64,000 nt of DNA from Anaeramoeba ignava BMAN (taxonomy: Eukaryota > Protista > Anaeramoebae), in contig JAPDFW010000008.1 of assembly GCA_028826165.1 (NCBI GenBank), forward strand, positions 33,859 through 97,858, in the 5' to 3' direction. The translations under genes were made by a program, and so were the position numbers. Within the stretch, counting starts at the first letter, position 1; every line of letters begins with the position of its first letter. The notes under the pieces are model-generated. The model searched no databases. It was not told where the DNA came from and saw nothing but the letters and a program-made list of their open reading frames with translations. Below are positions 1 to 60,366 of the stretch, in pieces.

Positions 1-2293
1 GAAAAACAGCACTTCATTTAGCATGTGAAAATGGAAGAATAAGATCTGTTATTGAACTTTCTAAATTATGGAGCAAATATTAATTTAACTTGCAATGTAT
101 ATTATTTATTTTATATTTATTCATTTTAAATTTATTTTATATTTGAAAAAATAATAAACAAAATAAATAGTTTGTATTTAATTATTTATTTAATAATTAA
201 TATCAAAATTAAATTTTAAATTTTAAATAAAAAAAAATAATTAGAATGTATTTTAATTTTTATTAAAATTAAATTAATTTAAATTTAAAATAAAATATTT
301 ATTTATATTTATATTTATATAGGGAGTTTGATTCAATTTAATAAATAAATAAATAAATAAATAAAATAATCCTTATTATTTTCCAAATTATTTTCCAAAT
401 TATTAGAAAGTAAATGAAAAATCCAAAAAATATAAATATAAATAATATAAATATAAATATAAATATAAATAATATAAATATAAATATAAATATAAAAATA
501 TTAGGAATGTGATCCACTTACAATTGCTGAAGAAAAGAAATATTCTGAAGTAGTACATATACTTAAGAAATATATAAATGGAGAAGATTATTCTTACGTT
601 TTAAGTGAATCACAAGATTTTATAGAAATTGAAAAACTATTACAAGAAAGTATCAAGAAAAAAGAAGAAGAAGAAGAAAAAGAAAAAGAAAAAGAAAAAG
701 AATCTCATAAAAAAAAAAGAAAAGCAAAAAGATCCAAAAAAAAACAAATTGAAAATCAAATTGAAATTGAAAATGAAATTGAAAATGAAAATGAAAATCA
801 AATTGAAAATGAAAATGAAAATGAAACAACAGAAAATGAAACAACAGAAAATGAAACAACAGAAACAGAAACAGATATTGAAAATGAAAATGATGATGAT
901 GATGATGATGAAAAACTAATTGATTTAACTTCAGCATTAATATTTAAACCATCATTGATAAAAGAAAATCCAACAAATAATGAAAACATTAATGTAGAAA
1001 TAAGTGAAAAAAAAGAACCAATTAATAATTTATCCGAAAATACAATTTCTGAAAATGGTATTAACTTAAATCTTATTAAGGCAAGAGAAAATTTAAGAAG
1101 TTTTTTAAGTTCAAAAGATCAAAAACTTGCCAAAATTCGAACAATTAAAAAGAATTTTAATGAACAAGGATTGAGTCTTATTGAAAATATTTTAATTCAA
1201 AAAAAGCAAAGTATTGAAAAAGAAAAAGAAAAAGAAAATCAAAATGAAAAAGAAAAATCAAAATCAAAATCAAAATCAAAATCAAAATCAAAATCAAAAT
1301 CAAAATCAAAAACCAGATAATAAATTAACTGATACAGATAAATTCAGAGAACAATTTAGCTTAACATCAAAAGATAGATTATTAGAATTTGATCCAAATT
1401 CATTAACAGATGTACAAAAAATAGGAGAAGGAGCATATGGAACTGTATTTAAAGCAAAAATGGATGAAATTGATGTTGCGATTAAATATTTCAAATTCAA
1501 ATTACAAAAGAAAGAAAGAGAAAGAGCAACATCAGAATTCAAAATTCTCAAATCATTAAATTATCCATTTATTGTTTCTTTTCTTGGATATAGTTTAAAT
1601 CCATATTGTATTATGATGGAATTTTGTGATCAAGGAAGTTTATCAGATTTAATTTATAATAACAAAATCGAATTTACTCAAGAAGAAATGTTTAAAATTT
1701 TCAAAGAAATCACATTTGCATTAATTTATCTTCATTCAAAACAAATTATCCATCGAGATCTTAAAAGTCAAAATATATTAATTGATCAACATGGAAGAGT
1801 AAAATTAGCAGATTTCGGATTAGCAACATTTACAGACTCAGAAAAACAATTATCAGCTGTTGGAACACCTAATTGGACAGCACCAGAAGTTCTTCAACGA
1901 TTAAAATATTCATATTCAGTAGATATTTTTTCAATTGGAATGATTATTTATGAAGTTACTCATAGAATAATTCCATTTGATAAACAAAATATTTTTGAAA
2001 TTATGATGAATATTCAAAATGGAATTAGACCATCTTTAAAAGATGATAATATTTTTAATGATATTATTGTTCAATGTTGGGCTCAAGATCCAAATGAAAG
2101 ACCTACTGCTACAGAATTACTTACAATGTTGAGTGATTTAGAAACACAAACTAAAAATCAAAATCAAAATCAAAATCAAAATTCAAATCAAAATCAAAAT
2201 CAAAATCAAAATCAAAATCAAAATCAAAATCAAAATCAAAATCAAAATCAAAATCAAAATCAAAATCAAAATCAAAATCAAAATCAAAATTAA
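1..2293 (+). CDS. Ankyrin-repeat plus TKL-group protein kinase, 5'-truncated by the window edge. Exons <1-96, 171-173, 245-247, 323-325, 407-409, 505-2293
   Basis: 1-96 reads KTALHLACENGRIRSVIEL/LNYGANINLTCN (one extra T near 58-60), with a GT donor at 97. After the TAG at 502-504 it reads ECDPLTIAEEKKYSEVVHILKKY, then an acidic linker with frameshifts in A-runs and the AATCAA tract. The kinase domain is intact: IGEGAYGTV, VAIK, HRDLKSQN, DFG, GTPNWTAPE. Poly-QN tail. Confidence 0.85.
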
Positions 2294-2485: not shown

Positions 2486-4307
2486 TCAATTTTTATCAAG
2501 TAAATTAGTTTTAGGATCATCATTTTCATTAATTTCTTCATTTGGATTTTGTAATTGATTTTGAATTTTTGACATTTCTTCTTGAATTTGATTAATTTCG
2601 ATTTGATTTCCACAATAACCTCCATTTAAAAAAAGTTCAGAAACATAAAATAAATCATTATAATTAGCAAAAGATTTTAAATGAATTTTAGAAGGAGGAA
2701 TTTTTGAAAATAATAAATGAATCCAATTTTTACAACAACCTTTTGAAAAAGGATTTTGAATATCTTTATAAATATTTCGATACTTTTTTTTTTGATAAAA
2801 ATTCAAATAAATAAAATGAATAAATAAAATGAATAAAATTAATTTCTTACATATTCTCTTGTTGTTAAATTTTTAGAAACTAAATAACAATGAAAAAAGG
2901 TTAATTTTGATAAATACATTGAAAAAGGAAGAGAATAAATTGTTAATAAATAACTATAGATTTTTTTAAAGAAAAAGAATTTGAATAATTTTTTGATAGT
3001 TTTGATTAAAATTAATAAAAAAAACCTTGCTAATGTTTTCACAAATGCTTCAGAAAATGTTTTTTCTTTCGTAAGAATAATAATATGAAGAATTGAAACA
3101 ACAAAAACAAAAAATATTGAAAGAGTTACAAAAATTAAGAAAAGAAAGAAAAATCTATAATTTCTTATTCCTAAATCACATCCAACCCATCCACCTTTTT
3201 TTTTTAAAAAAAATAACCAAAACATGAAAAGAAAGAAAAAATTTAAAAATCGGATAAAAATTTTTTAAAAATCGGATAAAAATTTTTTTACAATGATGAT
3301 CAAATTTTTGAACACAATTATCACAAATAGAACAATGAGAAGCACGAGGAGATCTATAAATATTGCAAGTATCTAAAAAATAAAAACAAATAAAATATTT
3401 ATATTTTATATTTTGAATTTCTTTTTTTTTTTGAATTTTTACCACAATAAGGTAATTCAAAAGTATTATTTTGAAATTCAAAAGGTTTTGTTTCAGGAAT
3501 ATGTTGAAAAGATCCCTAAAAATATAAAATATTAATATTAAATATTAATATAAAATATTAAATAATAAAATATTAAATATAAATAATAAATATTAAATAT
3601 AAAATAATAAATATTAATATTAAATATTAATATAAATATAAATAATAAATATAAATATAAAATATAAAATATTAAATATAAAATATTAAATATTAAATAT
3701 AAATATTAAATAATAAATATAAATATAAAATATAAATATTAAATATTAAATAATAAATATAAATATTAAATATAAAATATTAAATATAAAATATTAAATA
3801 TAAAAATATTAAATATATAAAAATATAAATATAAATATTAAATATAAATAATAAATATTAAATATTAAATATTAAATATTAAATAATAAATATTAAATAT
3901 TAAATATTAAATATTAAATATTAATATAAAATATTAATATGCACTGAAAAATATGTATCACGAGGAATAATTCCAGGTTCAATAAAAGAAGTTAATAACA
4001 AAGAAAGATTAACAGCAATAAAAAGAAAAAGAGCAACCAAAAAAATAGAAAAATGGATAATTTTAATAGAAGGATAAGCAGTAAAAATAATAAATAAAAT
4101 AAAAGGAATATTAAAGATAAATTCAGTAACAATTAAAGTTTTCCAATCAGGCCCAGTAAATAATTTTCCAGAACAACAAAACCTATTATTTCCTGGCCAA
4201 ACTTGATAAATTTTTAATTTTGAATGAAGAGTATGATTTTGATTTTGATTTTCAATTTGATTTTGATTAACAAATTCAAAATGTGTTTCAACTAAATTAT
4301 TATTCAT
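2486..4307 (-). CDS. DHHC palmitoyltransferase (ERF2/ZDHHC9-like), about 361 aa. Exons 4307-3945, 3515-3443, 3372-3292, 3194-3026, 2953-2851, 2782-2486
   Basis: [23 protein letters not shown]-terminus, [64 protein letters not shown]. All intron phases are consistent. Confidence 0.92.
3516..3944. repeat. A/T-only low-complexity repeat (AAATATT-like) filling DHHC intron 1
   Basis: Seen directly between the GT donor at 3944 and the AG at 3516. Confidence 0.9.
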
Positions 4308-16788: not shown

Positions 16789-18614
16789 ATGAATGATTGT
16801 TTATTTTTTGGTCAAAATCAATATCCAAAACTTATCAAAAATGAACCAAATAAAATAGCAAAACCAATTCAATTTAAATTTGAAAATGAAAATGAAAATG
16901 AAAATGAAAAACAAATTAAACAAATTTCATCAGCAAATTTTTCAACAATTTTCCTTTTTAAAAATGGAAAAGCAATAGAATATTTAAATGATAAAGATTC
17001 AAAACAAAAATCCTGAAAAATTCAAATTGAAGAAAATATTCAAAAAGTAACTGTTGGTTATCATAATGAAGCTATTTTAACAATAGAAGGAAATGTATTT
17101 TTGCAATTTTCCTTTTGAAAATGGGAGAATATAAAGATTCAAAACAAAAATATATTAACAAAAAATACAAAAGAATTTATCAATATTTCATCATTAATTG
17201 AAGATCCAAATGATAGAATAATTGAAGATATTGTTTCTGGTTACAGTTCAATTTACTTATTAACTTCAAATCAAAATGTTTATGGAATTGGTTCAAATCA
17301 ATATTGTCAACTTGGTTTTGATTTTAAAACACTTTATGAAACAGAAAAACCAATTTTAATGATGAAAAATGTTTCTAAAATATTTTCAGGAAATACATCA
17401 GATTGCATTTTTCTTTTAAATTCAAATCAAGAATTATTTGGATGCGGATATAATTATTCTGGTCAACTTGGATTAGGAGAATCAAGAAAAGAAGAAACAG
17501 AAATCCAAAAATTAACCAAAATCCAAAATATTCCAAAAGGCAAAATAATTGATATTCAATATGGAATTTCTTTTTCAATAATGTTGATTGAAAATCAAAA
17601 CGAAAACCCAAAAAGAAAACTTTATTCATGTGGATATTATGGATATAATGGACTTGGCAAAATACTTGAAAATACTTATGAATTTACTGAAATCAAATCA
17701 TCTTTATTTGAAGATAATGATGATAATATTCTTGATTTTTCTGTTGGACATTCTCATACTTTGATTTTAACTTCTAAAGGGAAAGTAATTGGATTTGGAG
17801 ATAATTATTATGGTCAATTAGGAACTGAAGATACAAATAATCAATCAATTCCAATTCAAATTGAACTTCCTAAATTAAGATTTAATGAAAATATTTCTAA
17901 TTATCATGTTCTTTGTGGATCTTTAAAATCATTCCTTTATTCTTCTCCTTCTTTTTCCAATCTTGAAGAAGATTTGATAAAATTATTTAGAAGAAAAGAA
18001 TTTTGTGATATTTCATTTAAAACAGAAAATGGAGAAATAATTGAAGCTCATAAATTAATATTGAAATATAGATTAAATCAAAATCAAAATCAAAATCAAA
18101 ATGAAAAACTTCAAGAAATTATTTCAAAAAAATCAATTAAAGAATCAAATCAAATATTTGAAATGATTTATTCAAACAAAATTATAAATCCAAAATTATA
18201 TTCTGAAATTAAAGAAATTATAAATTTAAATGAAAAAATTGAAGAAACAATGAAAAGAATTTATTTAAATGAAAATGAAAAAGATTTTATTATTGAAAGA
18301 AAAGAAAAACAGTATAAATTTCCCAAAATTAATATTAATAATGAGAAGTGAATTATATCGAGGAATGTTTTTATCTGTAACTGAAGACAAATCTAAATAA
18401 AGTTACAGATTATAGTGAATTAAGTAATGAATCATTTCAAATATTTGAATATTGGATTTATTCAAATCAAATTAAAAATGAAATTGAAATTACACAAGAA
18501 ATAATTGAAGAAATTAAAATTGGAATTGATTATTTTCAATTAAATCAAACAAATCCAAATTTATTTGATTTATTAATTAATAAATTTAATAACCAAAATC
18601 AAAATCAAAATTAA
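16789..18614 (+). CDS. RCC1-repeat plus tandem BTB protein, copy A. Frameshifted (pseudogene or consensus errors)
   Basis: Collinear with copy B: GSNQYCQLG, GCGYNYSGQLG, GFGDNYYGQLG, EFCDISFKTENGEIIEAHKLIL, MRSELYRGMF. Frame breaks near 17010, 17100-17160, 18325 and 18395. Confidence 0.75.
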
Positions 18615-18734
18615 AATCAAAATCAAAATCAAAATCAAAATCAAAATTAAAATCAAAATCAAAATCAAAATCAAAATCAAAATCAAAATTAAAATAAAAA
18701 TTAAAATTTTTTTTTCATTTTTTTCTTTTTAAAA

Positions 18735-20721
18735 ATGAATGAAATTTTATTTTTTGGTCAAAATGAATATCCAAAACTTATCAAAAATAAATCAAAAGGA
18801 ATAACAAAACCAATTCAATTTAAATTTGAAAATGAAAATGAAAATGAAAATGAAAATGAAAAAGAAAAAGAAAAATGAAAATGAAAATGAAAATGAAAAA
18901 CAAATTAAACAAATTTCATCAGGAAACTTTTCAACAATTTTCCTTTTTAAAAATGGAAAAGCAATAGAATATTTAAGAGATTCAAATCAAAATCCTGAAA
19001 AAATTCAAATTGAAAATATTCAAAAAGTGTCTGTTGGTCATGAAAATGAAGCTATTTTAACATTAGAAGGAAATGTATTTGCAAAAGGAAAATATATTAA
19101 TTCAAAAAATCCAAAAGAATTTATTAATATTTCATCATTAATTGAAGATACAAATGATAGAGTAATTGAAGATATTGTTTCTGGTTACAGTTCAATTTAC
19201 TTATTAACTTCAAATCAAAATGTTTATGGAATTGGTTCAAATGGTTGGGGTCAACTTGGTTTGCATTATGAAACACTTCAAAGAACAGAAAAACCAATTT
19301 TAATGATGAAAAATATTTCTAAAATATTTTCAGGAAATACATCAGATTGCATTTTTCTTTTAAATTCAAATCAAGAATTATTTGGATGCGGATATAATTA
19401 TCATGGTCAACTTGGATTAAAAGAAGCAATACTACAGGCAAAAGTCTATAAATTAACTCAATTCCAAAATATTCCAAAAGGCAAAATAATTGATATTAAA
19501 GGTGGATTTAATCATTCAATAATGTTAATTGAAGATGAAGATGAAAATGAAAATGAAAATGAAAATCCAAAAAGAAGACTTTATTCAACTGGAGATTATA
19601 AATCTAATGCACTTGGCAAGGCTCAAGATACAAAAATATTTACTGAAATCAAATCACCTTTATTTGAAAATGATGAAGATAATATTCTTAAAATTTCTTG
19701 TGGACAATATCATAATTTGATTTTAACAACAAATGGGAAATTGATAGTATTTGGAAATAATGAATTTGGTCAATTAGGAACTGGAGATATAAACCATCAA
19801 CCAACTCCAATTCAAATTGAACTTCCTAAATTAAGATTTAATGAAAATATTTCCAATTATCATGTTTCTTGTGGAAATAATAAATCATTTCTTTATTATT
19901 CTCCTCATTCTTTTTCCAATCTTGAAGAAGATTTTATAAAATTATTTGAAAGAAAAGAATTTTGTGATATTTCATTTAAAACAGAAAATGGAGAAATAAT
20001 TGAAGCTCATAAATTAATATTGAAATATAGATTAAATCAAAATCAAAATCAAATTGAAAAACTTCAAGAAATTATTTCAAAAAAATCAATTAAAGAATCA
20101 AATCAAATATTTGAAATGATTTATTCAAACAGAATTATAAATCCAATATTATATTCAGAAATTAAAGAAATTATAAATTCAAATGAAAAAATAGAAGAAA
20201 CAATGAAAAGAATTTATTTAAATGAAAATGAAAATGAAAATGAAAAAGATTTTATAATTGAAAGAGAAGAAAAACAATATAAATTTCCAAAATTAATATT
20301 AATAATGAGAAGTGAATTATATCGAGGAATGTTTTTATCTGTAACAGAAGACAAATCTAATAAAGTTACAGATTATAGTGAATTAAGTAATGAATCATTT
20401 CAAATATTTGAATATTGGATTTATTCAAATCAAATTAAAGATGAAATTGAAATTACACAAGAAATAATTGAAGAAATTCAAATTGGAATTGATTATTTTC
20501 AATTAAATCAAACATATCCAAATTTATTTGATTTATTAATTAATAAATTTAATAATCAAAATCAAAATCAAAATCAAAATCAAAATCAAAATCAAAATCA
20601 AAATCAAAATCAAAATCAAAATCAAAATCAAAATCAAAATCAAAATCAAAATCAAATTCAAATTCAAATTCAAAATCAAAATCAAAAAAAGAATAAAGAA
20701 AAAAATTGTTTAATTTTTTAA
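18735..20721 (+). CDS. RCC1-repeat plus tandem BTB protein, copy B, with a poly-QN spacer and C-terminal CaaX (CLIF)
   Basis: Likely ATG at 18735 (MNEILFFGQNEYPKLIK, matching copy A), with one frameshift in the GAAAAT/GAAAAA tract near 18870. RCC1 GxNxxGQLG repeats, two BTB domains, ending KKNKEKNCLIF. Confidence 0.88.
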
Positions 20722-20740: not shown

Positions 20741-23700
20741 TCAAAAACAAGAACACCCTTTAGATTTTTCATCTTTTCTTTGTGGTTTTTGAGTATTTAA
20801 TTGCTTTTTTTGTTTTGATTTTTTTTCTTGAATTAAATTTGGAGATTCTGAAACTTGAAAAAATTCCATTGCTTCTTCAATTTCTTGTAATAAATTCTTT
20901 GGAATATTATGAACATCCAATTCATTACAATAAAGAAATTTCAAAAAAATTTCCATTGATTTAATACTCAGCATTGATAAATCAGTCACTTGATTTGATT
21001 CATCTTGAACACTAACAAACATTCCTCTAAAAAATCCACTTCTTGCTGCCAAAACTTCTTTATGAGCTAAAAAACTTTTTTCTGTTCCTTTTGATTCATC
21101 TTTTTTGATAATCTTGAAATTTTTGCTTTCGTTTTGTGAATATAAATCCAAAAAACTTTTCTGCAATCCAACCAAATTAGATTTTGATTCAATTTCTTTT
21201 GCACTCATTCCAATTTCTTCTCCAATTTTAAATATTAAATTTTGTGAGTTTGGAAATTCTGCAAAATTTAAATTTCCACTATAAATCCACTTAAGAAATA
21301 TTTCCAGTTCTTTTTTCTCTTTTTTGATACTTATTAGTTTTAAATTTTCCAGATTTTTCCCAATTCTGTTTTCTAAAATGAGTTTATGAGAACAAACTTT
21401 TCCTTCTCTCGTTTCAAAATCAAAATCACACAACTCTTGTCTATCAAAAAATTGTAAATAATCTTGAACTAATGTGAAAAATAAAAGAATTTGAATTTCA
21501 GGATCATCAGTTAATTGAAAAGCTTGAAGATTCTTTTGATTTCCATTTTGATTTAAACAAAAAAAAAAGACAAAAAGTAAAATTTAAATTTGTAAAAAAA
21601 TTATTTTTGAAAGTTTTCAATTTTTTGATTTTACTTCCTATTTAATCCAAAATAAATCATTACTAAATATTCTTTTCTTTTCTTCTTCTTTTCATAACTC
21701 AAAAAAAATTACTTCCTAAATTGAAAAATATTATATTTTCATATTAAAATAAAAATTTAAATAATTAATTAGTTTTTTTTTTTGATTTAAACATTAGGAA
21801 TTGTTGGATCTGCTCCAGCTAAAATAAAAGATGATATAATTTGAATTTTATTTTCCTTTGGCATTTCTGTCATACAAGTAAAATGAAGTTGTGTTGATTT
21901 CTTTGATATAAATATTAATATTATTTATTTTGATGAATTAATTTTTTTTGTTGTTCTTCTTGCGAATTTTTTTGAAAAAGAAAATATTCTAAATGGATTA
22001 CAAACTAATCAAGAAGATTTATTTAGATTAAATTTTTATTTTTGGTTCTTGAAGAAAAATTACAAGATTAGTTTTGTTGACATCATAACCGTTTTTAATA
22101 TATTCTGAAATTTTTTCAACAGATTTTTCTTTGACATACAAACACATTGTGTTCCAATTCTAGTTTTAATTCAATTTTTTAAATTTAATTCAATTTTTTA
22201 GTTTTAATTCCAATTTTTTTTTGAATTAACATTATAAATTAATTTTCTTGCAAAATTTTGCATCATTGTTTTCAAATTATCCATTTCTTTTATTGATGTT
22301 TCTTCAAACATCATTGAGTATTCTTTTGCAAAAGCAAATCCTTCTTTTTTTGTAACTTCTCGATTTTCTTCAAAATCTAAAATTATTTTTTTTTTGGATC
22401 AAAAAATAAAATTCCATTTCTTTTTCTTATCTAAAAATAAAAATAAAAACCAAGTTTATTTCCAATAAGAAGAAATTCAGGTGAAAAATCTTCAGAAAAA
22501 GTTGATTTAAGTTCAGTAATCCATTTTCGAAGATTTTCAAATGTTTGTTTTTTTGTAATGTCATAAACTAATACTATTGCTTTTGATCCTCTATAATACA
22601 TTGGACTAACAAAAATTTTATAAAGAAAAAATAAAAAGCAAAATTTTTTGAATAAATTTTTGAGATTTGTTTTTAAAAAAAGAAATTAAATCACGCCAAA
22701 ACTCGATATCTTTCAACTCCAGCCTAAAAAGAAATAATCAATAAATTTAATTTGATTTAATTTAATTTAATTTGATTTAATTTAATTTGATTTAATTTAA
22801 TTTAATTTGATTTAATTTGATTTGGATTTGATTTAATTTAATTTAATTTAATTTGATTTAATTTGATTTAATTTAATTTAATTTGATTTTAATTTAATTT
22901 AATTTAATTTAATTTAATTTAATTTAATTTAATTTGGATTTGATTTAATTTAATTTGGATTTAATTTGATTTGATTTGATTTGATTTAATTTTAAATTTT
23001 GATTTAATTTAATTTGATTTAATTTAATTTAATTTAATTTGATTTTAATTTTAATTTGGATTTAATTTAATTTAATTTAATTTAATTTAATTTAATTTAA
23101 TTTAATTTAATTTGATTTAATTTTTTTTGAAATTTGATTTAATTTCCAATTTAATTTAAATTTTGGAAAAATTTAAACCTTTTTAATTTGATTTAATTTA
23201 ATTTAAGTTTAATTTAATTTAAATTTGGAAAAATTTTAATTTATTTTTTGAATTTAAAATTTTGGAATTCTGGATTTGATTTTGGATTTGATTTGATTAA
23301 ATTTGATTTAATTTAATTTATTTTGATTTAATTTAATTTAATTTGGATTTGAATTAAATTTTAATTTGGATTTAATTTAATTTGATTTAATTTAATTTAA
23401 TTTAATTTGGATTTAATTTAATTTGATTTGATTTGATTTGATTTGATTTGATTTGATTTGGATTTAATTTGGATTTAATTTGGATTTAATTTGGATTTAA
23501 TTTGGATTTAATTTGATTTGATTTGATTTAATTTAATTTAATTTGATTTGATTTAATTTGGATTTGACTTGATTTAATTTGAATTTTTTTTTGATAATAA
23601 AATACAGTATCCCACAACTCAAGTTTAACTTGTATTTGATCAATTTCATATGTTTTTGTTAAAAAAGATGCGCCAATAGTTGATTGAGTATCTAATTTTA

Positions 23701-23871
23701 TTAATTTTATTTTATTAAAAAAAATTTAAATGATAAAAACGTTTTCTTTTTATTTTAAAGTTTTATTTATTTACCAAGTGATATAACATTAGAAAAAATA
23801 GCTAAACAAATTGAACTTTTTCCAACTGTTGTATCACCAAGAAAAACAACTTTAAAAATTTGAGTATTCAT
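20741..23871 (-). CDS. Rab5/22-like GTPase - ankyrin repeats - BTB - BTB fusion with a C-terminal Cys motif, about 505 aa. Exons 23871-23775, 23691-23606, 22723-22695, 22605-22451, 22376-22231, 22159-22064, 22004-22002, 21900-21793, 21715-21713, 21637-21635, 21532-20741
   Basis: [64 protein letters not shown]. Then IKNGYDVNKTNL-F-KSTQLHFTC...AGADPTIPN-E-E-NLQAFQLTDDPEIQILL, followed by ELCDFDFETREGKVCSHKLIL, AHKEVLAARSGFFRGMF, ending KGCSCF. All ten introns are GT-AG and phase-consistent; total 1518 nt. Confidence 0.85.
22745..23585. repeat. (ATTTA/ATTTG/ATTTGG)n pentamer satellite in intron 2 of the Rab-ANK-BTB gene
   Basis: Seen directly. The intron spans 22724-23605. Confidence 0.9.
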
Positions 23872-24859: not shown

Positions 24860-26491
24860 TTATTTATTTGAATTTTCAATTAAATGATTCATTCTTGGAT
24901 TTAATTGGTAATAATCAATTATATCTTGAAAATCATTAATAACTTCAATAGGTGTATCTGAATCAAATGTTCCAAAATACATTAACTTAATAATTGATTT
25001 AATTTCAACTGGTGTTCTGTTATTATAATCACTAACTTGATTTGAAGAATCTGTAACGCTGATAAACATTCCTCGAAATAAATCACTTCTAACAAGTAAT
25101 ATAAATTTATGAACTTTGATTTCTTCATTTTGACAAATAATTTTAAAATCTTTGGTTTCTTCTTCATAAAATAATTCACTAAAATCTTTTTCTAAATTAT
25201 TTATTCCTCCAGTTTTTTCAATAATATTTTGGATTTTAAATTCTTCTTCAATTTCTCTTAAAATAAGATAATTTTTTGTTGTTCCAGTATAAATGAATTC
25301 TAAAAATTCTTGAATTTCTTTGATTGTTTTTGTTTCAAGAAATTCTAATAACTTTTCAATTAAAATTTCATTTTTAATGCAAATTCTTTGTTCAATAAAT
25401 ATTTTATGAGCAGAAATAACTCCATCAATTCCTTTTATATTAACATCAACTAAATCATTTAAAGATAAAGCACGTTGTAGATCTTCTTGAAGAACAGAAA
25501 AAGTAAGAGAAACTGAATAGATTATAGAATTACTTCTTCCTGTTTCAATCATTAAGTGTTTATGTTTATTATTGAGCTTTAAAGATTCTTTTTGTGGATA
25601 TGGTTTATAATCTTTATCTGAATTTGGAAGATATAATTCTAAATCTTCAGTTAATAAAGAAGCATCCCAACAACATCCAGAAACACAAGATACTCTTTTA
25701 TCATTAAATCCTTCAACTTTTCTAAAACTTCCATTACTTGGTTGAAAAGTTCCACCTGCAATCCAAATTTCATGAAATCCTTTTTCGTTTTCAATAATTG
25801 CTATTGAATGTTGATATGAACAAGAAATCATTATTACTTTCTTATCACATAAATCAGGAACAAGTTGATAACCTTTAACAGATGATTTTGAATTAATTCC
25901 TAATTGTCCAGCTCCATTTCTTCCTGATGAGTAAAAATTTCCTGAAAAATCTTGAAAGAAAAAATGAAAAGCATAATCATCACTAAATACTCTTGAAACA
26001 TTTTTAGAAACAAAAATAGGAATCCATATATTACTATCTCCACTCACTCCAGTTTCACAATCAATATTATATCCACAACTATATAAATCGTTGTTTGAAG
26101 TAATGAAATAAGATTGATAACAACCACATGCAATATCTTTAATAAAAATTTTTTTTTCAATAAAAAATTCAATTCTTTTTGGTGAATCAAGTGATTGACT
26201 TGAATTTCCATGACCTTGATGTCCATAAGTATTTCTTCCATAACTATAAACTGTTCCATCAGATTTGAGAATCAAAAAATGTTCGAAACTTACTCGAGCT
26301 TTTACAACATCTTCAAGTGAAAGTTTTTTAATATTTTGATTTGATTCTTGATATTCATAAAGTTTTCCATTTGTTGTTGTTATCATTGTTCCTGGTGTTC
26401 CACTTGATATTTCTTTGATTTCTTCTTCAATATTAATATTTAAAGGTTTTATATCTGTTCCTTTATTTTGAAAAATCCAAAGTTCATTCAT
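24860..26491 (-). CDS. RCC1-repeat plus tandem BTB protein, copy C (543 aa, intronless)
   Basis: YSYGRNTYGHQG, IKDIACGCYQS, SSGRNGAGQLG, VISAHKIFI, KDFKIICQNEEIKVHKFILLVRSDLFRGMF. Confidence 0.92.
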   Translation of the reverse strand: MNELWIFQNKGTDIKPLNINIEEEIKEISSGTPGTMITTTNGKLYEYQESNQNIKKLSLEDVVKARVSFEHFLILKSDGTVYSYGRNTYGHQGHGNSSQSLDSPKRIEFFIEKKIFIKDIACGCYQSYFITSNNDLYSCGYNIDCETGVSGDSNIWIPIFVSKNVSRVFSDDYAFHFFFQDFSGNFYSSGRNGAGQLGINSKSSVKGYQLVPDLCDKKVIMISCSYQHSIAIIENEKGFHEIWIAGGTFQPSNGSFRKVEGFNDKRVSCVSGCCWDASLLTEDLELYLPNSDKDYKPYPQKESLKLNNKHKHLMIETGRSNSIIYSVSLTFSVLQEDLQRALSLNDLVDVNIKGIDGVISAHKIFIEQRICIKNEILIEKLLEFLETKTIKEIQEFLEFIYTGTTKNYLILREIEEEFKIQNIIEKTGGINNLEKDFSELFYEEETKDFKIICQNEEIKVHKFILLVRSDLFRGMFISVTDSSNQVSDYNNRTPVEIKSIIKLMYFGTFDSDTPIEVINDFQDIIDYYQLNPRMNHLIENSNK

Positions 26492-26600: not shown

Positions 26601-28229
26601 TTATTTATTTGAATTTTCGATTAAATGATTCATTCTTGGATTTAATTGGTAATAATCAATTATATCTTGAAAATCATTAATAACTTCAATAGGTGTATCT
26701 GAATCAAATGTTCCAAAATACATTAACTTAATAATTGATTTAATTTCAACTGGTGTTCTGTTATTATAATCACTAACTTGATTTGAAGAATCTGTAACGC
26801 TGATAAACATTCCTCGAAATAAATCACTTCTAACAAGTAATATAAATTTATGAACTTTGATTTCTTCATTTTGACAAATAATTTTGAAATCTTTGGTTTC
26901 TTCTTCATAAAATAATTCACTAAAATCTTTTTCTAAATTATTTATTCCTCCAGTTTTTTCAATAATATTTTGGATTTTAAATTCTTCTTCAATTTCTCTT
27001 AAAATAAGATAATTTTTTGTTGTTCCAGTATAAATGAATTCTAAAAATTCTTGAATTTCTTTGATTGTTTTTGTCTCAAGAAATTCTAATAATTTTTCAA
27101 TTAAAATTTCATTTTTAATGCAAATTCTTTGTTCAATAAATATTTTATGAGCAGAAATAACTCCATCAATTCCTTTTATATTAACATCAACTAAATCATT
27201 TAAAGATAAAGCACGTTGTAAATCTTCTTGAAGAACAGAAAAAGTAAGAGAAACTGAATAGATTATAGAATTACTTCTTCCTGTTTCAATCATTAAGTGT
27301 TTATGTTTATTATTGAGTTTTAAAGATTCTTTTTGTGGATATGGTTTATAATCTTTATCTGAATTTGGAAGATATAATTCTAAATCTTCAGTTAATAAAG
27401 AAGCATCCCAACAACATCCAGAAACACAAGATACTCTTTTATCATTAAATCCTTCAACTTTTCTAAAACTTCCATTACTTGGTTGAAAAGTTCCACCTGC
27501 AATCCAAATTTCATGAAATCCTTTTTCATTTTCAATAATTGCTATTGAATGTTGATATGAACAAGAAATCATTATTACTTTCTTATCACATAAATCAGGA
27601 ACAAGTTGATAACCTTTAACAGATGATTTTGAATTAATTCCTAATTGTCCAGCTCCATTTCTTCCTGATGAGTAAAAATTTCCTGAAAAATCTTGAAAGA
27701 AAAAATGAAAAGCATAATCATCACTAAATACTCTTGAAACATTTTTAGAAACAAAAATAGGAATCCATATGTTACTACCTCCACTCACTCCAGTTTCACA
27801 ATTAACATTATATCCACAACTATATAAATCGTTGTTTGAAGTAATGAAATAAGATTGATAACAACCACATGCAATATCTTTAATAAAAATTTTTTTTTCA
27901 ATAAAAAATTCAATTCTTTTTGGTGAATCAAGTGATTGACTTGAATTTCCATGACCTTGATGTCCATAAGTATTTCTTCCATAACTATAAACTGTTCCAT
28001 CAGATTTGAGAATCAAAAAATGTTCATAGCTTACTCGAGCTTTTACAACATCTTCAAGTGAAAGTTTTTTAATATTTTGATTTGATTGATATTCATAAAG
28101 TTTTCCATTTGTTGTTGTTATCATTGTTCCTGGTGTTCCACTTGATATTTCTTTGATTTCTTCTTCAATATTAATATTTAAAGGTTTTATATCTGTTCCT
28201 TTATTTTGAAAAATCCAAAGTTCATTCAT
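26601..28229 (-). CDS. RCC1-repeat plus tandem BTB protein, copy D (542 aa), near-identical tandem duplicate of copy C
   Basis: Same motifs. The duplication unit is about 1.74 kb and includes the flanks. Confidence 0.92.
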   Translation of the reverse strand: MNELWIFQNKGTDIKPLNINIEEEIKEISSGTPGTMITTTNGKLYEYQSNQNIKKLSLEDVVKARVSYEHFLILKSDGTVYSYGRNTYGHQGHGNSSQSLDSPKRIEFFIEKKIFIKDIACGCYQSYFITSNNDLYSCGYNVNCETGVSGGSNIWIPIFVSKNVSRVFSDDYAFHFFFQDFSGNFYSSGRNGAGQLGINSKSSVKGYQLVPDLCDKKVIMISCSYQHSIAIIENEKGFHEIWIAGGTFQPSNGSFRKVEGFNDKRVSCVSGCCWDASLLTEDLELYLPNSDKDYKPYPQKESLKLNNKHKHLMIETGRSNSIIYSVSLTFSVLQEDLQRALSLNDLVDVNIKGIDGVISAHKIFIEQRICIKNEILIEKLLEFLETKTIKEIQEFLEFIYTGTTKNYLILREIEEEFKIQNIIEKTGGINNLEKDFSELFYEEETKDFKIICQNEEIKVHKFILLVRSDLFRGMFISVTDSSNQVSDYNNRTPVEIKSIIKLMYFGTFDSDTPIEVINDFQDIIDYYQLNPRMNHLIENSNK

Positions 28230-39318: not shown

Positions 39319-42201
39319 ATGAGTAATCCAGAAAAAGATAATAAAAATACTCTTTTACATCTTGCTTGTCAAAATCAAGACTCTATTGATGTTATCAAAT
39401 ATTTAATTGAAAAAGGAACAGATATTAATGCCAAAAACAATGAAAATGCAACTCCTTTACATTTTGCTTGTCAATTTCAAAATTCATTTGAAACTATTAA
39501 ATATTTAATTGAAAAAGGAGCAGATGTTAATGTTCAGACAAATTATTCTGCAACTCCTTTACATTTTGCTTGTCAATTTCAAAATTCATTTGAAACTATT
39601 AAATTGTTAATTGAAAAAGGAGCAGATGTCAATGCCAAAACAAACCATTATTTTGCAACCCCTTTTCATACTGCTTGTCAATTTCAAACATTTGAAACTA
39701 TTAAATTGTTAATTGGAAATGGAGCAGATGTCAATGCCAAAACAAGTGAAAATCAAACACCTTTTCATATTGCTTGTCAATTTCAAACTTCATTTGAAAC
39801 TATTAAATTGTTAATTGAAAAAGGAGCAGATATCAATGTCAAAACAAACGATAATCAAACACCTTTACATTTGGTTTGCCAATTTCAAAATTCATTTGAA
39901 ACTATTAAATTGTTAATTGAAAAAGGAGCAGATGTCAATGCCAAAACAAAGGATAATCAAACACCTTTACATTTGGTTTGTCAATTTCAAAAAGAAAATT
40001 TATTGGAAATTGTCAAATTACTTATAGAAAAAGGAGCAAATCCCGATATTCAAAACAAAATGTCTCAAACACCTTTAATTTATGTTTGCCAAAATCAAAA
40101 CAAAAATTCAATAGAAGTTGTGAAATATTTAGTTGAAAATGATGTGTATGTCAACATAAAAGCCATTGATACTCAAACACCTTTGCATTTTGTTTGTAAA
40201 TATAATCACAAACAAATATTTGAAGTGATTAAGTTAATGATTCAAAAAGGTGCAGATCCCAATACTAAAACGAAATACAGCCTCGTAACTCCCTTTCATA
40301 TTGCTTGTCAATATCAAACATCATTTGAAATTATTAATTTTTTGATTGATAATGGAGCAGATGTCAATGCCAAAACAAAAAAGAACGAAACTCCTTTACA
40401 TTTTGCTTGTCAAATTCATGCTTCAATTGAAATTATTAAATTGCTAATTGAAAAAGGAGCAGATGCCAATGCCAAAACAAATTTCAACGAAACGCCATTA
40501 GATTTTGTTTGCAATTTACAAAAACCAAATTTAATTGATATCATGGAAATTCTCATTAACAACGGAGCAAATCCTAATACTCAAACAACAACTAATTCAA
40601 CACCCTTATATTTTATTTGCCAATCCCAATATAAAGACACAGTCAAAAACATGCAATATTTACTTGAAAGAGGAGCTCTTCTTACACACTCAAGAAAATC
40701 CAAACAATCACTACTTCATTTTGCTTGTCAACAACAAAACTCAGAATATACTATTAAGTTTCTAATTGAAAAAGGCATGAGTCCTGATTTAAAAGATTCT
40801 AAAAAAACAACGCCATTACATCTGGCATGTCAATATCAAAATTCGATTGAAATTATTAAATATTTAATTGAGAATGGAGCAAATCCAAACCAGAAAAACG
40901 ATGACTTCGAACTACCTTTGCATTTTGCCTGCAAAATATACAATAAAAACTCAACCGAAATTATCAAGTATTTAATTGAATTAGGATCTGATGTGAATTC
41001 AAAGGCAGTCAAAAATTACACACCTTTGCATTATATTTGTCAACAAAAAAAAGCAAATTTTGAAACAATCAAGTTCCTCGTTGAAAATGGAGCCGATATT
41101 AATGCCGAAATTGGATATTATAAACAAACCCCTCTTCATTTATCTTGTAAACACCAAAACTCAATTCAAATTATCCGATATTTGATTGAGAAAGGAGCAA
41201 ATATAGATGCAAAAACACATTCACAAGAAACACCTTTATTGTTGGCAATCCTAGAAAACAACCAAAATGCAGCCAAAGTATTGCTAATGAATGATGCAGA
41301 AGTTATTGGTTTGAATAAGAAAATGTTCACACAAGAATTACTTGATTTGTACACACAAATTTACTCATTGAATCAAGATATGAATCAATTACTCAATTCA
41401 AACGAAAATTTTTCAGATTTCGAAATTGTATGCAGTGATTTCGAAAAATTTCATCTTCATAAATTGATTCTCTTAAAAAGATTTGATAACAACGAATCCA
41501 CACTAGAAAAATTTGTCAAACTTTGCCAACAAAAACCAAAACACATTGTTCAATTAATTGTTAATTTTATTTATACAGGTTTTGCCTCTTTTGATCAATC
41601 GATCCAAAAATTGCAAAAATTAGTTAATTGCAATAAAGAGATAGATGAATGTCATCGTCTATTTTCCCAAATGAAAATTTCTTGGGATGAAATAAACAAA
41701 AAAGAAGCAGAATTTATATCATTGCAAAAGGAACAAAACAAAGAACAACTGGAAATAAATTCCTTATTAGAAGACTTTTTCAACGAAATTGGATTTGATT
41801 CAAAGTGGATTAACTCGAAAAAAGGAAGAAGAGGAATTACCAAAGATTTCCATCAATTATTCCAAGATGATTCTTCAAAAGATTTTGCAATCATTTGTGA
41901 AAATGATCAAGAAATTAAAGCTCATAAATTAATATTAATAATAAGAAGTGAATTGTTTAAAGGAATGTTTTTAAATGTTCAAGATTCTTCAAATCAAGTT
42001 CATGATTATTCAGGAAAATCATTTCAAACAATTCAACAATTAATCTATTTCTTTTATCATGATGAAATTGATGAAACAAAAGAAATTACAACTGAAATTG
42101 CTCAAGAAATTGAAGAATCTCAATATTATTATCAATTAAATCCAAATTCCATCTTAAAAATTATTCTTCAATTCGTTACTAATTCTATTTTAAGAAAATA
42201 A
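39319..42201 (+). CDS. Ankyrin-repeat (about 19 repeats) plus tandem BTB protein, 960 aa, intronless
   Basis: Repeated TPLHFACQ...LIEKGADVNAKT, then FSDFEIVC..FHLHKLIL and KDFAIICENDQEIKAHKLILIIRSELFKGMF. Confidence 0.95.
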   Translation: MSNPEKDNKNTLLHLACQNQDSIDVIKYLIEKGTDINAKNNENATPLHFACQFQNSFETIKYLIEKGADVNVQTNYSATPLHFACQFQNSFETIKLLIEKGADVNAKTNHYFATPFHTACQFQTFETIKLLIGNGADVNAKTSENQTPFHIACQFQTSFETIKLLIEKGADINVKTNDNQTPLHLVCQFQNSFETIKLLIEKGADVNAKTKDNQTPLHLVCQFQKENLLEIVKLLIEKGANPDIQNKMSQTPLIYVCQNQNKNSIEVVKYLVENDVYVNIKAIDTQTPLHFVCKYNHKQIFEVIKLMIQKGADPNTKTKYSLVTPFHIACQYQTSFEIINFLIDNGADVNAKTKKNETPLHFACQIHASIEIIKLLIEKGADANAKTNFNETPLDFVCNLQKPNLIDIMEILINNGANPNTQTTTNSTPLYFICQSQYKDTVKNMQYLLERGALLTHSRKSKQSLLHFACQQQNSEYTIKFLIEKGMSPDLKDSKKTTPLHLACQYQNSIEIIKYLIENGANPNQKNDDFELPLHFACKIYNKNSTEIIKYLIELGSDVNSKAVKNYTPLHYICQQKKANFETIKFLVENGADINAEIGYYKQTPLHLSCKHQNSIQIIRYLIEKGANIDAKTHSQETPLLLAILENNQNAAKVLLMNDAEVIGLNKKMFTQELLDLYTQIYSLNQDMNQLLNSNENFSDFEIVCSDFEKFHLHKLILLKRFDNNESTLEKFVKLCQQKPKHIVQLIVNFIYTGFASFDQSIQKLQKLVNCNKEIDECHRLFSQMKISWDEINKKEAEFISLQKEQNKEQLEINSLLEDFFNEIGFDSKWINSKKGRRGITKDFHQLFQDDSSKDFAIICENDQEIKAHKLILIIRSELFKGMFLNVQDSSNQVHDYSGKSFQTIQQLIYFFYHDEIDETKEITTEIAQEIEESQYYYQLNPNSILKIILQFVTNSILRK

Positions 42202-54783: not shown

Positions 54784-57700
54784 ATGCCACCAATTAAAGG
54801 AAATCCAAGAAAAACAAGACCTTCAAGAAGAAAAGGAGTAAACTATTAAATTAAATATTAAATTAAATATAAAATTAAATATAAAATTATTTATAAAATT
54901 ATTTATAAAATTATATATAAAATTATATATAAAATTATTTATTAAATTATTTATAAAATTATTTATAAAATTAAATATAAAATTATTTATAAAATTATTT
55001 ATAAAATTAAATATAAAATTAAATATAAAATTAAATATAAAATTATTTATAAAATTATTTATAAAATTAAATATAAAATTATTTATAAAATTATTTATAA
55101 AATTATTTATAAAATTATTTATAAAATTAAATATAAAATTATTTATAAAATTAAATATAAAATTATTTATAAAATTATTTATAAAATTATTTATAGAATT
55201 ATTTATAAAATTATTTATAAAAATTATATAAAATTATTTATAAAATTATTTATAAAATTATTTATAAAATTATTTATAAAATTATTTATAAAATTATTTA
55301 TAAAATTATTTATAAAATTATTTATAAAATTAAATATAAAATTATTTTATAAAATTATTTATAAAATTATTTATAAAATTATTTTATAAAATTAATTATA
55401 AAATTAAATATAAAATTAAATATAAAATTATTTATTAAATTAACATAAAATTATTTTATAAAATTATTTATAAAATTATTTTAAAAATTATATATAAAAA
55501 TTATATATAAAATTATATATAAAAATTATTTATAAAATTATTTATAAAATTATTTATAAAATTATTTATAAAATTATTTTATAAAATTATTTATAAAATA
55601 TTATTTAAAAATTATATATAAAATTATTTATAAAATTATTTATAAAATTATTTATTTCAAATTAAATATAAAATTATTTATAAAAATTATTTATAAAATT
55701 ATTTATAAAATTAAATATAAAATTAAATATAAAATTATTTATAAAATTAAATATAAAATTAAATATAAAATTATTTATAAAATTAAATATAAAATTATTT
55801 ATAAAATTAAATATAAAATTAATTATAAAATTATTTATAAAATTAAATATAAAATTATTTATAAAATTAAATATAAAATTATTTATAAAATTAAATATAA
55901 AATTATTTATAAAATTAAATATAAAATTAATTATAAAATTATTTATAAAATTATTTATAAAATTAAATATAAAATTATTTTATAAAATTAATTATAAAAT
56001 TAATTATAAAATTATTTATAAAATTTTATATTTATAAAATTATTTATAAAATTAAATATAAAATTAAATATAAAAATTATTTATAAAAATTATTTATAAA
56101 ATTATTTATAAAATTATTTATAAAATTATTTATAAAATTAAATATTAAATTAATTATAAAATTATATATAAAATTAAATATAAAATTATTTATAAAATTA
56201 TTTATAAAATTAAATATAAAAATTAAATATAAAATTATTTATAAAATTATTTATAAAATTAAATTTAAAATTAATTATTAAATTAAATATTAAATTATTT
56301 ATAAAATTAAATATTAAATTATTTATAAAATTTAAATATAAAATTATTTATAAAATTATTTATAAAATTAAATATAAAATTATTTTATAAAATTAATTAT
56401 AAAAAAATATTTATAAAATTAGTTATTAAATTAATTATAAAAATTAGTTATTAAATTAATTATAAAATTATTTATTAACTTAATTATAAAATTATTTATA
56501 AAAATTAAATATAAAATTAAATATAAAATTATATATAAAATTATTTATAAAATTATTTTATAAAATTATTTATAAAAATTATTTATAAAATTATTTATAA
56601 AATTATTTATAAAATTATTTATAAAATTATTTATAAAATTATTTATAAAATTATTTTATAAAATTAAATATAAAATTAAATATAAAATTAAATATAAAAT
56701 TAAATATAAAATTATTTATAAAATTATTTATAAAATTAATTATAAAATTAAATATAAAATTATTTATAAAATTAATTATAAAATTATTTATAAAATTATT
56801 TATAAAATTAATTATAAAATTAAATATAAAATTATTTATAAAATTATTTATAAAAATTATTTATAAAATTATTTATAAAATTAAATATAAAATTATTTAT
56901 AAAATTAAATATAAAATTAAATATTAAATTAATTATAAAATTATTTATAAAATTATTTATAAAATTATTTATAAAATTAATTATAAAATTAAATATAAAA
57001 TTAAATATAAAATTAAATATAAAATTAAATATAAAATTAAATTTAAAATTAATTATTAAATTAAATATTAAATTATTTTATAAAATTAAATATTAAATTA
57101 TTTTATAAAATTTAAATATAAAATTATTTATAAAATTATTTATAAAATTAAATATAAAATTATTTTATAAAATTAATTATAAAAATATTTATAAAAATTA
57201 GTTATTAAATTAATTATAAAATTAGTTATTAAATTAATTATAAAATTATTTATTAACTTAATTATAAAATTATTTATAAAATTAAATATAAAATTAAATA
57301 TAAAATTATATATAAAATTATTTTATAAAATTATTTTATAAAATTATTTTATAAAATTATTTATAAAATTATTTATAAAAATTATTTATAAAATTATTTT
57401 ATAAAATTATTTTATAAAATTATTTATAAAATTATTTATAAAAATTAAATATAAAATTAAATATAAAATTAAATATAAAATTAAATATAAAATTATTTAT
57501 AAAATTATTTATAAAATTAATTATAAAATTAAATATAAAATTATTTTATAAAATTAATTATAAAATTATTTATAAAATTATTTATAAAATTAATTATAAA
57601 ATTAAATATAAAATTATTTATAAAATTATTTATAAAATTATTTATAAAATTATTTTATAAAATTAAATATAAAATTATTTTATAAAATTAAATATAAAAT

Positions 57701-60366
57701 TAAATATTAAATTAATTATAAAATTATTTATAAAATTATTTATAAAATTATTTATAAAATTAATTATAAAATTAAATACAAAAATTAAATATAAAATTAA
57801 ATATAAAATTAAATATAAAATTAAATTTAAAATTAATTATTAAAATTAAAATTATTTATAAAATTAAATTAAATTATTTATAAAATTTAAATATAAAATT
57901 ATTTATAAAATTATTTATAAAATTAAATATAAAATTATTTATAAAATTAATTATAAAATTATTTATAAAATTATTTATAAAATTATTTATAAAATTATTT
58001 ATAAAATTATTTTATAAAAATTATTTATAAAATTATTTATAAAATTATTTATAAAATTATTTATAAAATTAATTATAAAATTATTTATAAAATTAATTAT
58101 AAAATTAAATATAAAATTATTTATAAAATTAATTATAAAATTAAATATAAAATTATTTATAAAATTATTTATAAAATTATTTATAAAATTAAATATAAAA
58201 TTATTTATAAAATTATTTATAAAATTATTTATAAAATAATTTATAAAATTATTTATAAAATTATTTTTATAAAATTATATATTAAATTATTTTATAAAAT
58301 TATTTATAAAATTAAATATAAAATTATTTATAAAATTAATTATAAAATTAATTATAAAATTAAATATAAAATTAAATATAAAATTATTTATAAAATTATT
58401 TATAAAATTATTTATAAAATTATTTATAAAATTAAATATAAAATTATTTATAAAATTAAATATAAAATTAAATATAAAATTAAATATAAAATTAATTATA
58501 AAATTAAATATAAAATTATTTATAAAATTATTTTATAAAATTAAATATAAAATTATTTATAAAATTATTTATAAAATTAAATATAAAATTATTTATAAAA
58601 ATTATTTATAAAATTATTTATAAAATTATTTATAAAATTATTTATAAAATTAAATATTAAATTAAATATAAAATTATTTATAAATTTAAATATAAAATTA
58701 AATATAAAATTATTTATAAAATTAAATATAAAATTATTTATAAAATTATTTATAAAATTATTTATAAAATTATTTATAAAATTATTTATAAAATTATTTA
58801 TAAAATTAAATATTAAAATTAAATATAAAATTAAATATTAAAATTATTTATAAAATTATTTATAAAATTAAATATAAAATTAAATATAAAATTATTTATA
58901 AAATTAAATATAAAATTAAATATAAAATTATTTATAAAATTAAATATAAAATTATTTATAAAATTATTTATAAAATTATTTATAAAATTATTTATAAAAT
59001 TAAATATAAAATTATTTATAAAATTATTTATAAAATTATTTATAAAATTATTTATAAAATTAAATATAAAATTATATATAAAATTATTTATAAAATTATT
59101 TATAAAATTATTTATTAAATTATTTATTAAATTATTTATAAAATTATTTATAAAATTGAATATTAAATTAATTATAAAATTATTTATAAAATTATTTATA
59201 AAATTAATTATAAAATTATTTATAAAATTAAATATAAAATTAAATATAAAATTATTTATAAAATTATTTATAAAATTATATATAAAATTAAATATAAAAT
59301 TATTTATAAAATTATTTATAAAATTATTTATAAAATTAAATATAAAATTAATTTATAAAATTAATTATAAAATTAAATATAAAATTATTTATAAAATTAA
59401 TTATAAAATTATTTATAAAATTATTTATAAAATTATTTATAAAATTAATTATAAAATTATTTATAAAATTAATTATAAAATTATTTATAAAATTAAATAT
59501 AAAATTAAATATAAAATTATTTATAAAATTAATTATAAAATTATTTATAAAATTATTTATAAAATTAAATATAAAATTAAATATAAAATTATTTATAAAA
59601 TTATTTATAAAATTATTTATAAAATTATATATAAAATTAAATATAAAATTATATAAAATTAAATATAAAATTATTTATAAAATTAAATATAAAATTAAAT
59701 ATAAAATTAAATATAAAATTAAATATAAAATTAATTATAAAATTATTTATAAAATTATTTATAAAATTATTTATAAAATTATTAATAAAATTATTTATAA
59801 AATTAATTATAAAATTAATTATAAAATTATTTATAAAATTAAATATAAAATTAAATATAAAATTAAATATAAAATTAAATATAAAATTAAATATAAAATT
59901 AAATATAAAATTATTTATAAAATTATTTATAAAATTATTTATAAAATTATTTATAAAATTATTTATAAAATTATTTATAAAATTATTTATAAAATTATTT
60001 ATAAAATTATTTATAAAATTATTTATAAAATTATTTATAAAATTATTTATAAAATTATTTATAAAATTATTTATAAAATTATATATAAAATTATTTATTA
60101 AATTATTTATTAAATTAAATATAAAATTATTTATTAAATTAATTATAAAATTTTAGAGAACTTCAAAAAGAGTTTATTTTATTAGACAACTTATTAGAGA
60201 AGTTTCTGGTTTTGCACCTTATGAAAGAAGAACTATTGAACTTATTAAAAATGGAAGAGAAAAAAGAGCTTTGAAATTTTGCAAAAAAAGACTTGGAACT
60301 CAAAAAAGAGCTAAAAAGAAAAGAGAAGAACTTCAAAATTATGTCTTATCTTTAAGAAAAAAATAA
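54784..60366 (+). CDS. RPL36: 60S ribosomal protein eL36, 87 aa. Exons 54784-54837 and 60157-60366, split by a 5319-nt intron
   Basis: [18 protein letters not shown]|[61 protein letters not shown] at 54838, TAG at 60154-60156, phase 0. Confidence 0.95.
54845..60150. repeat. (ATAAAATTATTT/ATAAAATTAAAT)n 12-mer satellite, about 5.3 kb, forming the RPL36 intron
   Basis: Seen directly. Rare variants (TTAGTTATT, ATTAACT) recur about 780 bp apart, near 56420-56480 and 57200-57260. Confidence 0.95.

What the first reader, a model, noticed from the sequence alone, without database searches (positions are those of the whole stretch)
97..504. Four consecutive single-codon (3-nt) micro-exons in an ankyrin hairpin of the kinase gene
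Seen: the apparent 408-nt intron contains four internal TAG trinucleotides, and each is followed by exactly 3 nt and then GT: TAG|TTT|GTATTT (171-173), TAG|AAT|GTATTT (245-247), TAG|GGA|GTTTGA (323-325), TAG|AAA|GTAAAT (407-409). They cut the region into five introns of 74, 71, 75, 81 and 95 nt, matching the short-intron size seen elsewhere in the window, and G is otherwise very rare here. All are phase 0 and add F, N, G, K, giving GANINLTCN-FNGK-ECDPLTIA. Known: this is the beta-hairpin loop between ankyrin repeats, part of the binding surface. Inference: any subset can be skipped in frame (up to 16 loop variants). Including one exon gives the canonical 7-residue spacing; including all four gives an extended NG-turn hairpin.
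Basis: partly seen in the sequence, partly recalled or inferred. Interest (0 to 1): 0.95.

Follow-up and report, generated by a model that had tools for sequence, protein, structure and literature searches.

The report
Genes spelled one codon per exon
In the anaerobic amoeba Anaeramoeba ignava, this ankyrin-kinase gene and many others appear to encode parts of their proteins in three-letter exons, one amino acid each, some in chains of a dozen or more; I found no paper describing this, and it still needs RNA confirmation.

Summary
Four AG|NNN|GT triplets split 97-504 into five introns of 71-95 nt; 0 of 200,000 shuffles reach four. The genome is Anaeramoeba ignava BMAN, whose modal intron is 76 nt.

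Upstream of the window, all 11 earlier junctions of this gene carry one 3-nt exon. Ten repeat exons are exactly 96 nt; five of eight tested start at Pfam Ank position 2 of 33, so the triplet supplies the missing residue.

Genome-wide, AT-flanked TAG-N(k)-GTA gives 9, 20, 389 and 31 hits for k = 1-4. Forty-two triplets precede an ankyrin exon (control 0), all sense. One chain of 12 consecutive triplets reads as a membrane-helix-like run.

The exons are very probably real. The '16 loop variants' idea is unproven. A neighbouring gene needs both of its consecutive triplets for normal spacing, and long chains read cumulatively, so all four (F-N-G-K) are most likely included together. Against this, one triplet alone gives canonical spacing here.

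No paper found. This scan noted the same architecture elsewhere in this genome.

The parts
1..96 (+). Last full ankyrin-repeat exon (starts one base before the window; 97 nt, probably 96 plus one homopolymer error); ends ...NLTCN
   Evidence: ten sister exons upstream are exactly 96 nt
97..170 (+). Intron 1 (74 nt, GT-AG, phase 0)
171..173 (+). 3-nt exon TTT (Phe)
174..244 (+). Intron 2 (71 nt)
245..247 (+). 3-nt exon AAT (Asn)
248..322 (+). Intron 3 (75 nt)
323..325 (+). 3-nt exon GGA (Gly)
326..406 (+). Intron 4 (81 nt; donor GTTTGA, also used at window -146)
407..409 (+). 3-nt exon AAA (Lys)
410..504 (+). Intron 5 (95 nt)
505..573 (+). Start of terminal exon: last (capping-type) ankyrin repeat, beginning ECDPL in the same register as the GxTPL starts of the other repeat exons
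   Evidence: weak matches to DARPin repeats, best E 0.00036
574..1369 (+). Acidic low-complexity linker, with an apparent +1 homopolymer frameshift near 1253-1257
1370..2293 (+). Protein kinase domain (PF00069 E 5e-62; PF07714 E 3e-54), QN tail and stop
22001..22003 (-). 3-nt exon TTT in the neighbouring Rab-ankyrin-BTB gene; restores canonical hairpin spacing
21712..21714 (-). 3-nt exon GAA, first of a consecutive pair in the Rab-ankyrin-BTB gene
21634..21636 (-). 3-nt exon GAA, second of the pair; both are needed for canonical spacing (GADPTIPN-E-E-NLQAF)

Best explanation
The four triplets are genuine single-codon spliceosomal exons that are normally all kept, giving a hairpin three residues longer than usual (TCN-FNGK-ECDP) before the last ankyrin repeat. 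They are one case of a codon-per-exon architecture common in A. ignava. Shown from DNA: each repeat of this gene is a 96-nt exon plus a 3-nt exon; many loci share this; chains of ten or more exist. Inferred: the short (about 76 nt), very AT-rich introns are recognised across the intron, with G almost confined to splice sites, so exon size hardly matters and triplets merge as neighbouring introns are removed. Inferred origin: duplication of an intron-plus-codon unit, which always keeps the frame, followed by codon divergence. This lets hairpin loops gain, lose or change residues one at a time in evolution. Some skipping as noise is likely.
For: Eleven of 11 upstream junctions carry AG-NNN-GT, joint chance about 1e-20; motif spacing is 33 in 7 of 9 intervals with the triplets (plus a compensating 32/34) and 32 without. 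Five of eight 96-nt exons tested match PF00023 from position 2 at residue 1, and a sixth from position 3 at residue 2. Length spectrum 9/20/389/31/45 for 1/2/3/4/6 nt. Triplet + intron + GxT[PA]LH exon: 42 versus 0 control, all sense; with 4-6 nt spacers only 5, four of them 6 nt. For joint inclusion: the E|E pair at 21714/21636 is needed together; C87:271578-272701 reads LIALALLLIGIV and the C1 chains read as sense preferred codons; the four sites have ordinary donors and acceptors; the order N-G-K resembles an ankyrin turn, while G is rare at the single-slot position (2 of 79). Near-identical introns within the C1 and C87 chains fit unit duplication.
Against: No transcript was seen. The flanking exons are in the register that fits exactly one codon. 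A +3 loop was seen in 0 of 101 hairpins from A. ignava ankyrin-BTB proteins (79 canonical, 12 at +1), though capping repeats are often irregular (own knowledge). The five introns here show no clear mutual similarity (best z 2.6 against a background sd of 1.4), so duplication is not shown for this locus. Two frameshifts in the assembly leave a pseudogene possible.
Confidence: 0.6

Rival explanations
1. The exons are real but alternatively used (mutually exclusive or combinatorial), so one gene makes several hairpin variants. In ankyrin-BTB genes with larger arrays this would be a splicing-based receptor repertoire.
For: One triplet gives canonical spacing and both flanking exons are in single-slot register. 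+3 loops were absent in 101 hairpins. All exons are phase 0. The hairpin is part of the ankyrin binding surface (own knowledge). Repeat-per-exon diversification is proposed in brown algae (PMC3341825; PMC11378527). Earlier scan notes suggest it (unchecked).
Against: The E|E pair and the 12-codon hydrophobic chain make sense only cumulatively. Introns of 71-81 nt are normal-sized, so nothing forces mutual exclusion. No weak splice sites mark the four out. Eleven other junctions of this gene have a single triplet and so offer no choice.
Confidence: 0.3
2. Only one of the four (or a fixed subset) is used; the rest are silent leftovers of unit duplication inside a longer intron.
For: Canonical spacing needs one. 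The gene has longer introns elsewhere (202, 387 nt) and a few AG-NNN sites without a donor.
Against: All four keep intact TAG and GT signals with normal spacing in a sequence otherwise nearly free of G, which unused sites should lose.
Confidence: 0.06
3. The triplets are not exons: 97-504 is one 408-nt intron, the pattern is chance or a satellite, or the gene is a dead copy.
For: No RNA data. Two frameshifts in the assembled gene. Some long chains elsewhere are also tandem repeats.
Against: 0 of 200,000 shuffles; sharp 3-nt peak; Pfam register; 42 of 42 sense triplets; modal intron 76 nt (PMC11550330 supplement).
Confidence: 0.04

Closest known systems
3-nt and 1-nt microexons of animals, plants and fungi (Drosophila hth 3-bp exon, PMC7392893; MAP4K5 three-base exon, PMC8632122; plant APC11 and VPS55 1-nt exons, PMC8831610; Fusarium CYP621A 1-nt exon, PMC12940212)
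   Same: Tiny internal GT-AG exons that annotation tends to miss; in plants coding microexons are usually included in the major isoform.
   Different: Those are isolated, or at most adjacent pairs (5 + 12 nt in rice), and plants peak at 9 nt. Here the peak is at exactly 3 nt, there are 15 in one gene, one sits at each repeat junction, and they form chains of 4 to more than 10.
Schistosoma micro-exon genes (MEGs; PMC10526429)
   Same: Runs of very short exons (3-81 bp per the abstract) building a coding stretch; alternative splicing is reported.
   Different: MEGs encode secreted, largely disordered proteins, have introns up to 5 kb and mixed exon sizes. Here the exons are uniformly one codon, the introns about 75 nt, and the host is a folded cytosolic ankyrin-kinase. 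No homology is implied.
Repeat-per-exon genes: Ectocarpus LRR-ROCO and NB-ARC-TPR (PMC3341825, PMC11378527); animal ankyrins with 99-nt phase-0 exons (own knowledge, not checked)
   Same: Each repeat unit is bounded by phase-0 introns at a fixed position.
   Different: The 99-nt unit is split into 96 + 3. The modular piece is a single loop residue, not a whole repeat. No spare or inverted repeat exons were seen here.
Recursive splicing and fungal stwintrons (own knowledge)
   Same: An apparently long intron removed in several steps.
   Different: No AG-GT zero-length site (the gap is always 3 nt) and no splice signal is interrupted by an inner intron; each step leaves a codon behind.

Membership tests
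Spliceosomal microexon | Internal exon of 30 nt or less flanked by AG and GT | tested here: met
Spliceosomal microexon | Flanking introns of normal size and composition for the organism | tested here: met
   71-95 nt, 3-12% GC versus mode 76 nt, 8.14% GC
Spliceosomal microexon | Needed for the coding frame or domain register | tested here: met
   96-nt exons mostly start at PF00023 position 2; spacing 33 with, 32 without. Shown for the single triplets; not decisive for the four.
Spliceosomal microexon | Present in spliced transcripts | tested here: inconclusive
Alternatively spliced diversity cassette (MEG-like or Dscam-like) | Symmetric, frame-preserving exons in series | tested here: met
   all phase 0, 3 nt
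Alternatively spliced diversity cassette (MEG-like or Dscam-like) | Several isoforms observed in RNA | not testable with these tools
   no usable reads
Alternatively spliced diversity cassette (MEG-like or Dscam-like) | A feature enforcing or favouring choice (too-short introns, weak sites, near-identical alternatives) | tested here: not met
   normal intron lengths and splice sites; introns not clearly related. RNA docking structures were not tested.
Schistosoma MEG family | Secreted short protein encoded mostly by micro-exons, with long introns | tested here: not met
   ankyrin + kinase protein, median intron 74 nt
Recursive splice site or stwintron | AG directly followed by GT, or an inner intron interrupting an outer splice signal | tested here: not met
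   spacer is 3 nt at all four. The one AGT at 169-171 has no donor-like role needed, and using it would drop the codon.
Ankyrin-repeat protein kinase | Ankyrin repeats (PF00023) followed by a kinase domain (PF00069/PF07714) | tested here: met

The most novel reading that the evidence does not exclude
A. ignava uses arrays of single-codon exons at ankyrin binding loops as a splicing-level diversity generator: cells include different subsets or choices of codon exons, making a natural library of binding surfaces on kinase and BTB scaffolds, perhaps for dealing with symbionts or parasites.
Probability: 0.2. Interest if true: 0.95.

Novelty: new variant of a known kind. Interest (0 to 1): 0.82.

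Why it matters
Even with constant inclusion, this would be an extreme gene structure: hundreds (roughly 1,000 or more by extrapolation) of one-codon exons, and protein segments written one residue per exon. It tests how small an exon can be when introns are defined on their own, how the spliceosome handles chains of 3-nt exons, and how introns multiply by unit duplication. It also means standard annotation of this genome probably misses many residues and introns. If inclusion varies, it would be a new way to diversify a binding surface residue by residue. Existing public RNA-seq can decide this cheaply.

Tried and rejected
1. Read evidence. 
2. DNA search with window 1-620 returned only AT-rich low-complexity matches. 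The 19 regions fetched on that lead held satellites, not micro-exon arrays. I did not fetch this genome's DNA by another tool.
3. Searches for an annotated or transcript-derived copy of this protein found none (the three hits are unrelated). The one EukProt-only protein found (P0152) comes from an intronless gene, so it is no test.
4. No A. flamelloides relatives were returned, so conservation is untested.
Exons were searched one by one by reference; joining was done only inside a script to count spacing. Loop variants were therefore not folded.
6. The reversed-pattern control is unreliable for k = 6 (666 hits), so spacer length was used as the main control.
7. Recursive splicing, stwintron and chance were considered and rejected (see rivals and membership).

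Full report
OBSERVATION. Every coordinate in the finding is right. Region 97-504 has 15 G in 408 nt. Its AGs are at 170, 244, 322, 406 and 504, plus two that overlap the donors at 326 and 410. Each of the four internal TAGs is followed by three bases and GT. The five introns are 74, 71, 75, 81 and 95 nt. No shuffle in 200,000 gave four such sites.

ORGANISM. The assembly has 42,843,398 bases in 147 contigs, identical to Table S1 for Anaeramoeba ignava BMAN in PMC11550330. Paralogs of a window protein are named A. ignava. The paper gives 32,108 introns, a modal length of 76 nt and 8.14% GC. The word 'exon' does not occur in that supplement file. Searches for Anaeramoeba with microexon or with exons and splicing found nothing. 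The library lacks most subscription journals.

THE WHOLE GENE. The gene starts 3,248 bases before the window. It has 28 exons and 27 introns, median 74 nt: a first exon, then eleven pairs of a 3-nt exon and a repeat exon, then the four triplets, then a terminal exon with the last repeat, an acidic linker and a kinase domain (PF00069 E 5e-62). Ten repeat exons are exactly 96 nt. The eleventh is 97 nt with an extra T in a run, and a second +1 lies in an A run near 1253-1257; I read both as assembly errors (inference). Of eight repeat exons scanned, five match Pfam Ank from model position 2 at residue 1 through position 32 or 33, one matches 3-33 from residue 2, one matches weakly at 2-23, and one matches 2-32. 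The missing first position is what the triplet supplies. Motif spacing with triplets is 33 in seven of nine intervals, plus one 32/34 pair; without them it is 32. The joint chance of all eleven junctions holding AG-NNN-GT is about 1e-20.

GENOME-WIDE. With A/T-only flanks of 11-13 nt, TAG-N(k)-GTA occurs 9, 20, 389, 31 and 45 times for k = 1, 2, 3, 4 and 6; about half of the 45 are one repeat. That strict pattern catches 4 of this gene's 15 triplets, so the true total may be above 1,000 (rough extrapolation). By hand count of the first 100 hits, 55 triplets contain G or C, against about 22% expected from intron composition; none is TAA or TAG. Hits are not independent, since many are paralogs. 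A triplet followed by an intron and an exon starting GxT[PA]LH occurs 42 times on about 30 contigs, against 0 in the control, and all 42 are sense codons. With 4-6 nt spacers there are five, four of them 6 nt. Three triplets in a row occur 249 times (overlapping counts) against 70. A family on C21, C24 and C35 has triplets that look like phase 1 (one is TGA), so the feature is not limited to phase 0 (inference). Most high-scoring ankyrin loci in the genome are intronless, so this is one class of ankyrin gene, not all.

ALL FOUR, OR A CHOICE? This is the open point. For a choice: both flanking exons are in the single-slot register, and among 101 hairpins in A. ignava ankyrin-BTB proteins 79 are canonical, 12 are +1 and none is +3. 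For joint inclusion: in the Rab-ankyrin-BTB gene in this window two consecutive GAA exons are both needed for canonical spacing (lead from s1-686551). On C87 twelve consecutive triplets read LIALALLLIGIV, a membrane-helix-like run, and on C1 chains read RNYNRDLLED and DSDYRFPPQ. The four sites here have ordinary donors, acceptors and intron sizes. The order N-G-K resembles an ankyrin turn, whereas G seldom fills the single slot (2 of 79). This junction precedes the capping repeat, where irregular loops are common (own knowledge). I put joint inclusion at 0.6 and appreciable alternative use at 0.3.

MECHANISM. Shown: the anatomy. Inferred: short introns nearly free of G are recognised across the intron, so a 3-nt exon needs no recognition of its own and triplets fuse as introns are removed. 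Origin by duplication of an intron-plus-codon unit fits the near-identical introns within the C1 and C87 chains. Introner-like insertion is not excluded. At this locus the five introns are too diverged to tell.

LIMITS. No transcript evidence was obtained. Conservation in other Anaeramoeba species is untested.

COMPARISON AND VERDICT. Single 1-3 nt exons are known, as are Schistosoma MEGs and repeat-per-exon genes in brown algae. I found no description of a sharp genome-wide 3-nt class, a 96 + 3 ankyrin unit, or long chains of one-codon exons. Earlier first-reader notes in this scan report the same architecture on other contigs of this genome; they are unchecked and not counted as support. Verdict: a real and striking feature, a new variant of a known kind; interest 0.82, pending RNA.

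Noticed in passing
G000 C87:271578-272701 (-): At least 12-14 consecutive 3-nt exons about 85 nt apart, separated by near-identical introns, reading as a hydrophobic membrane-helix-like run. The list was cut off there, so the chain may be longer.
   Followed up: partly
G000 C1:409307-412859 (-): About 30 triplets in chains 75-80 nt apart, all sense codons; the introns resemble those of the C87 chain.
   Followed up: partly
G000 C35:350926-429874, C21:67778-71107, C24:122014-122362, C1:1058075-1073179: A family of triplets with a shared flank, about 179 nt apart on C35, mostly with T in the middle; probably phase-1 3-nt exons of a repeat protein. Not identified.
   Followed up: no
window 20741-23871 (-): Rab-ankyrin-BTB-BTB gene. 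The switch II motif reads WDTAGVERY across a roughly 880-nt low-complexity intron (Val in place of the usual Gln). It has three 3-nt exons.
   Followed up: partly
window 58-60 and 1253-1257: Two apparent +1 homopolymer frameshifts in the kinase gene; assembly error or pseudogene not resolved.
   Followed up: partly
L031 upstream introns (window about -2830 and -1130): AG-NNN sites followed by ATT instead of GT inside longer introns; possibly decayed codon exons.
   Followed up: no
window 39319-42201 (+): Intronless ankyrin-BTB gene (960 aa) of a large A. ignava family, a natural contrast to the micro-exon class.
   Followed up: partly
window 2486-4307 (-): Intron-split gene with a DHHC palmitoyltransferase-like motif, tail to tail with the kinase gene (recognised by eye).
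   Followed up: no
window 17359-20721 (+), 24860-26491 and 26601-28229 (-): RCC1-BTB-like genes; the last two are near-identical tandem copies.
   Followed up: no
window 56001-60000: About 4 kb with under 0.5% GC (A/T-only satellite).
   Followed up: no
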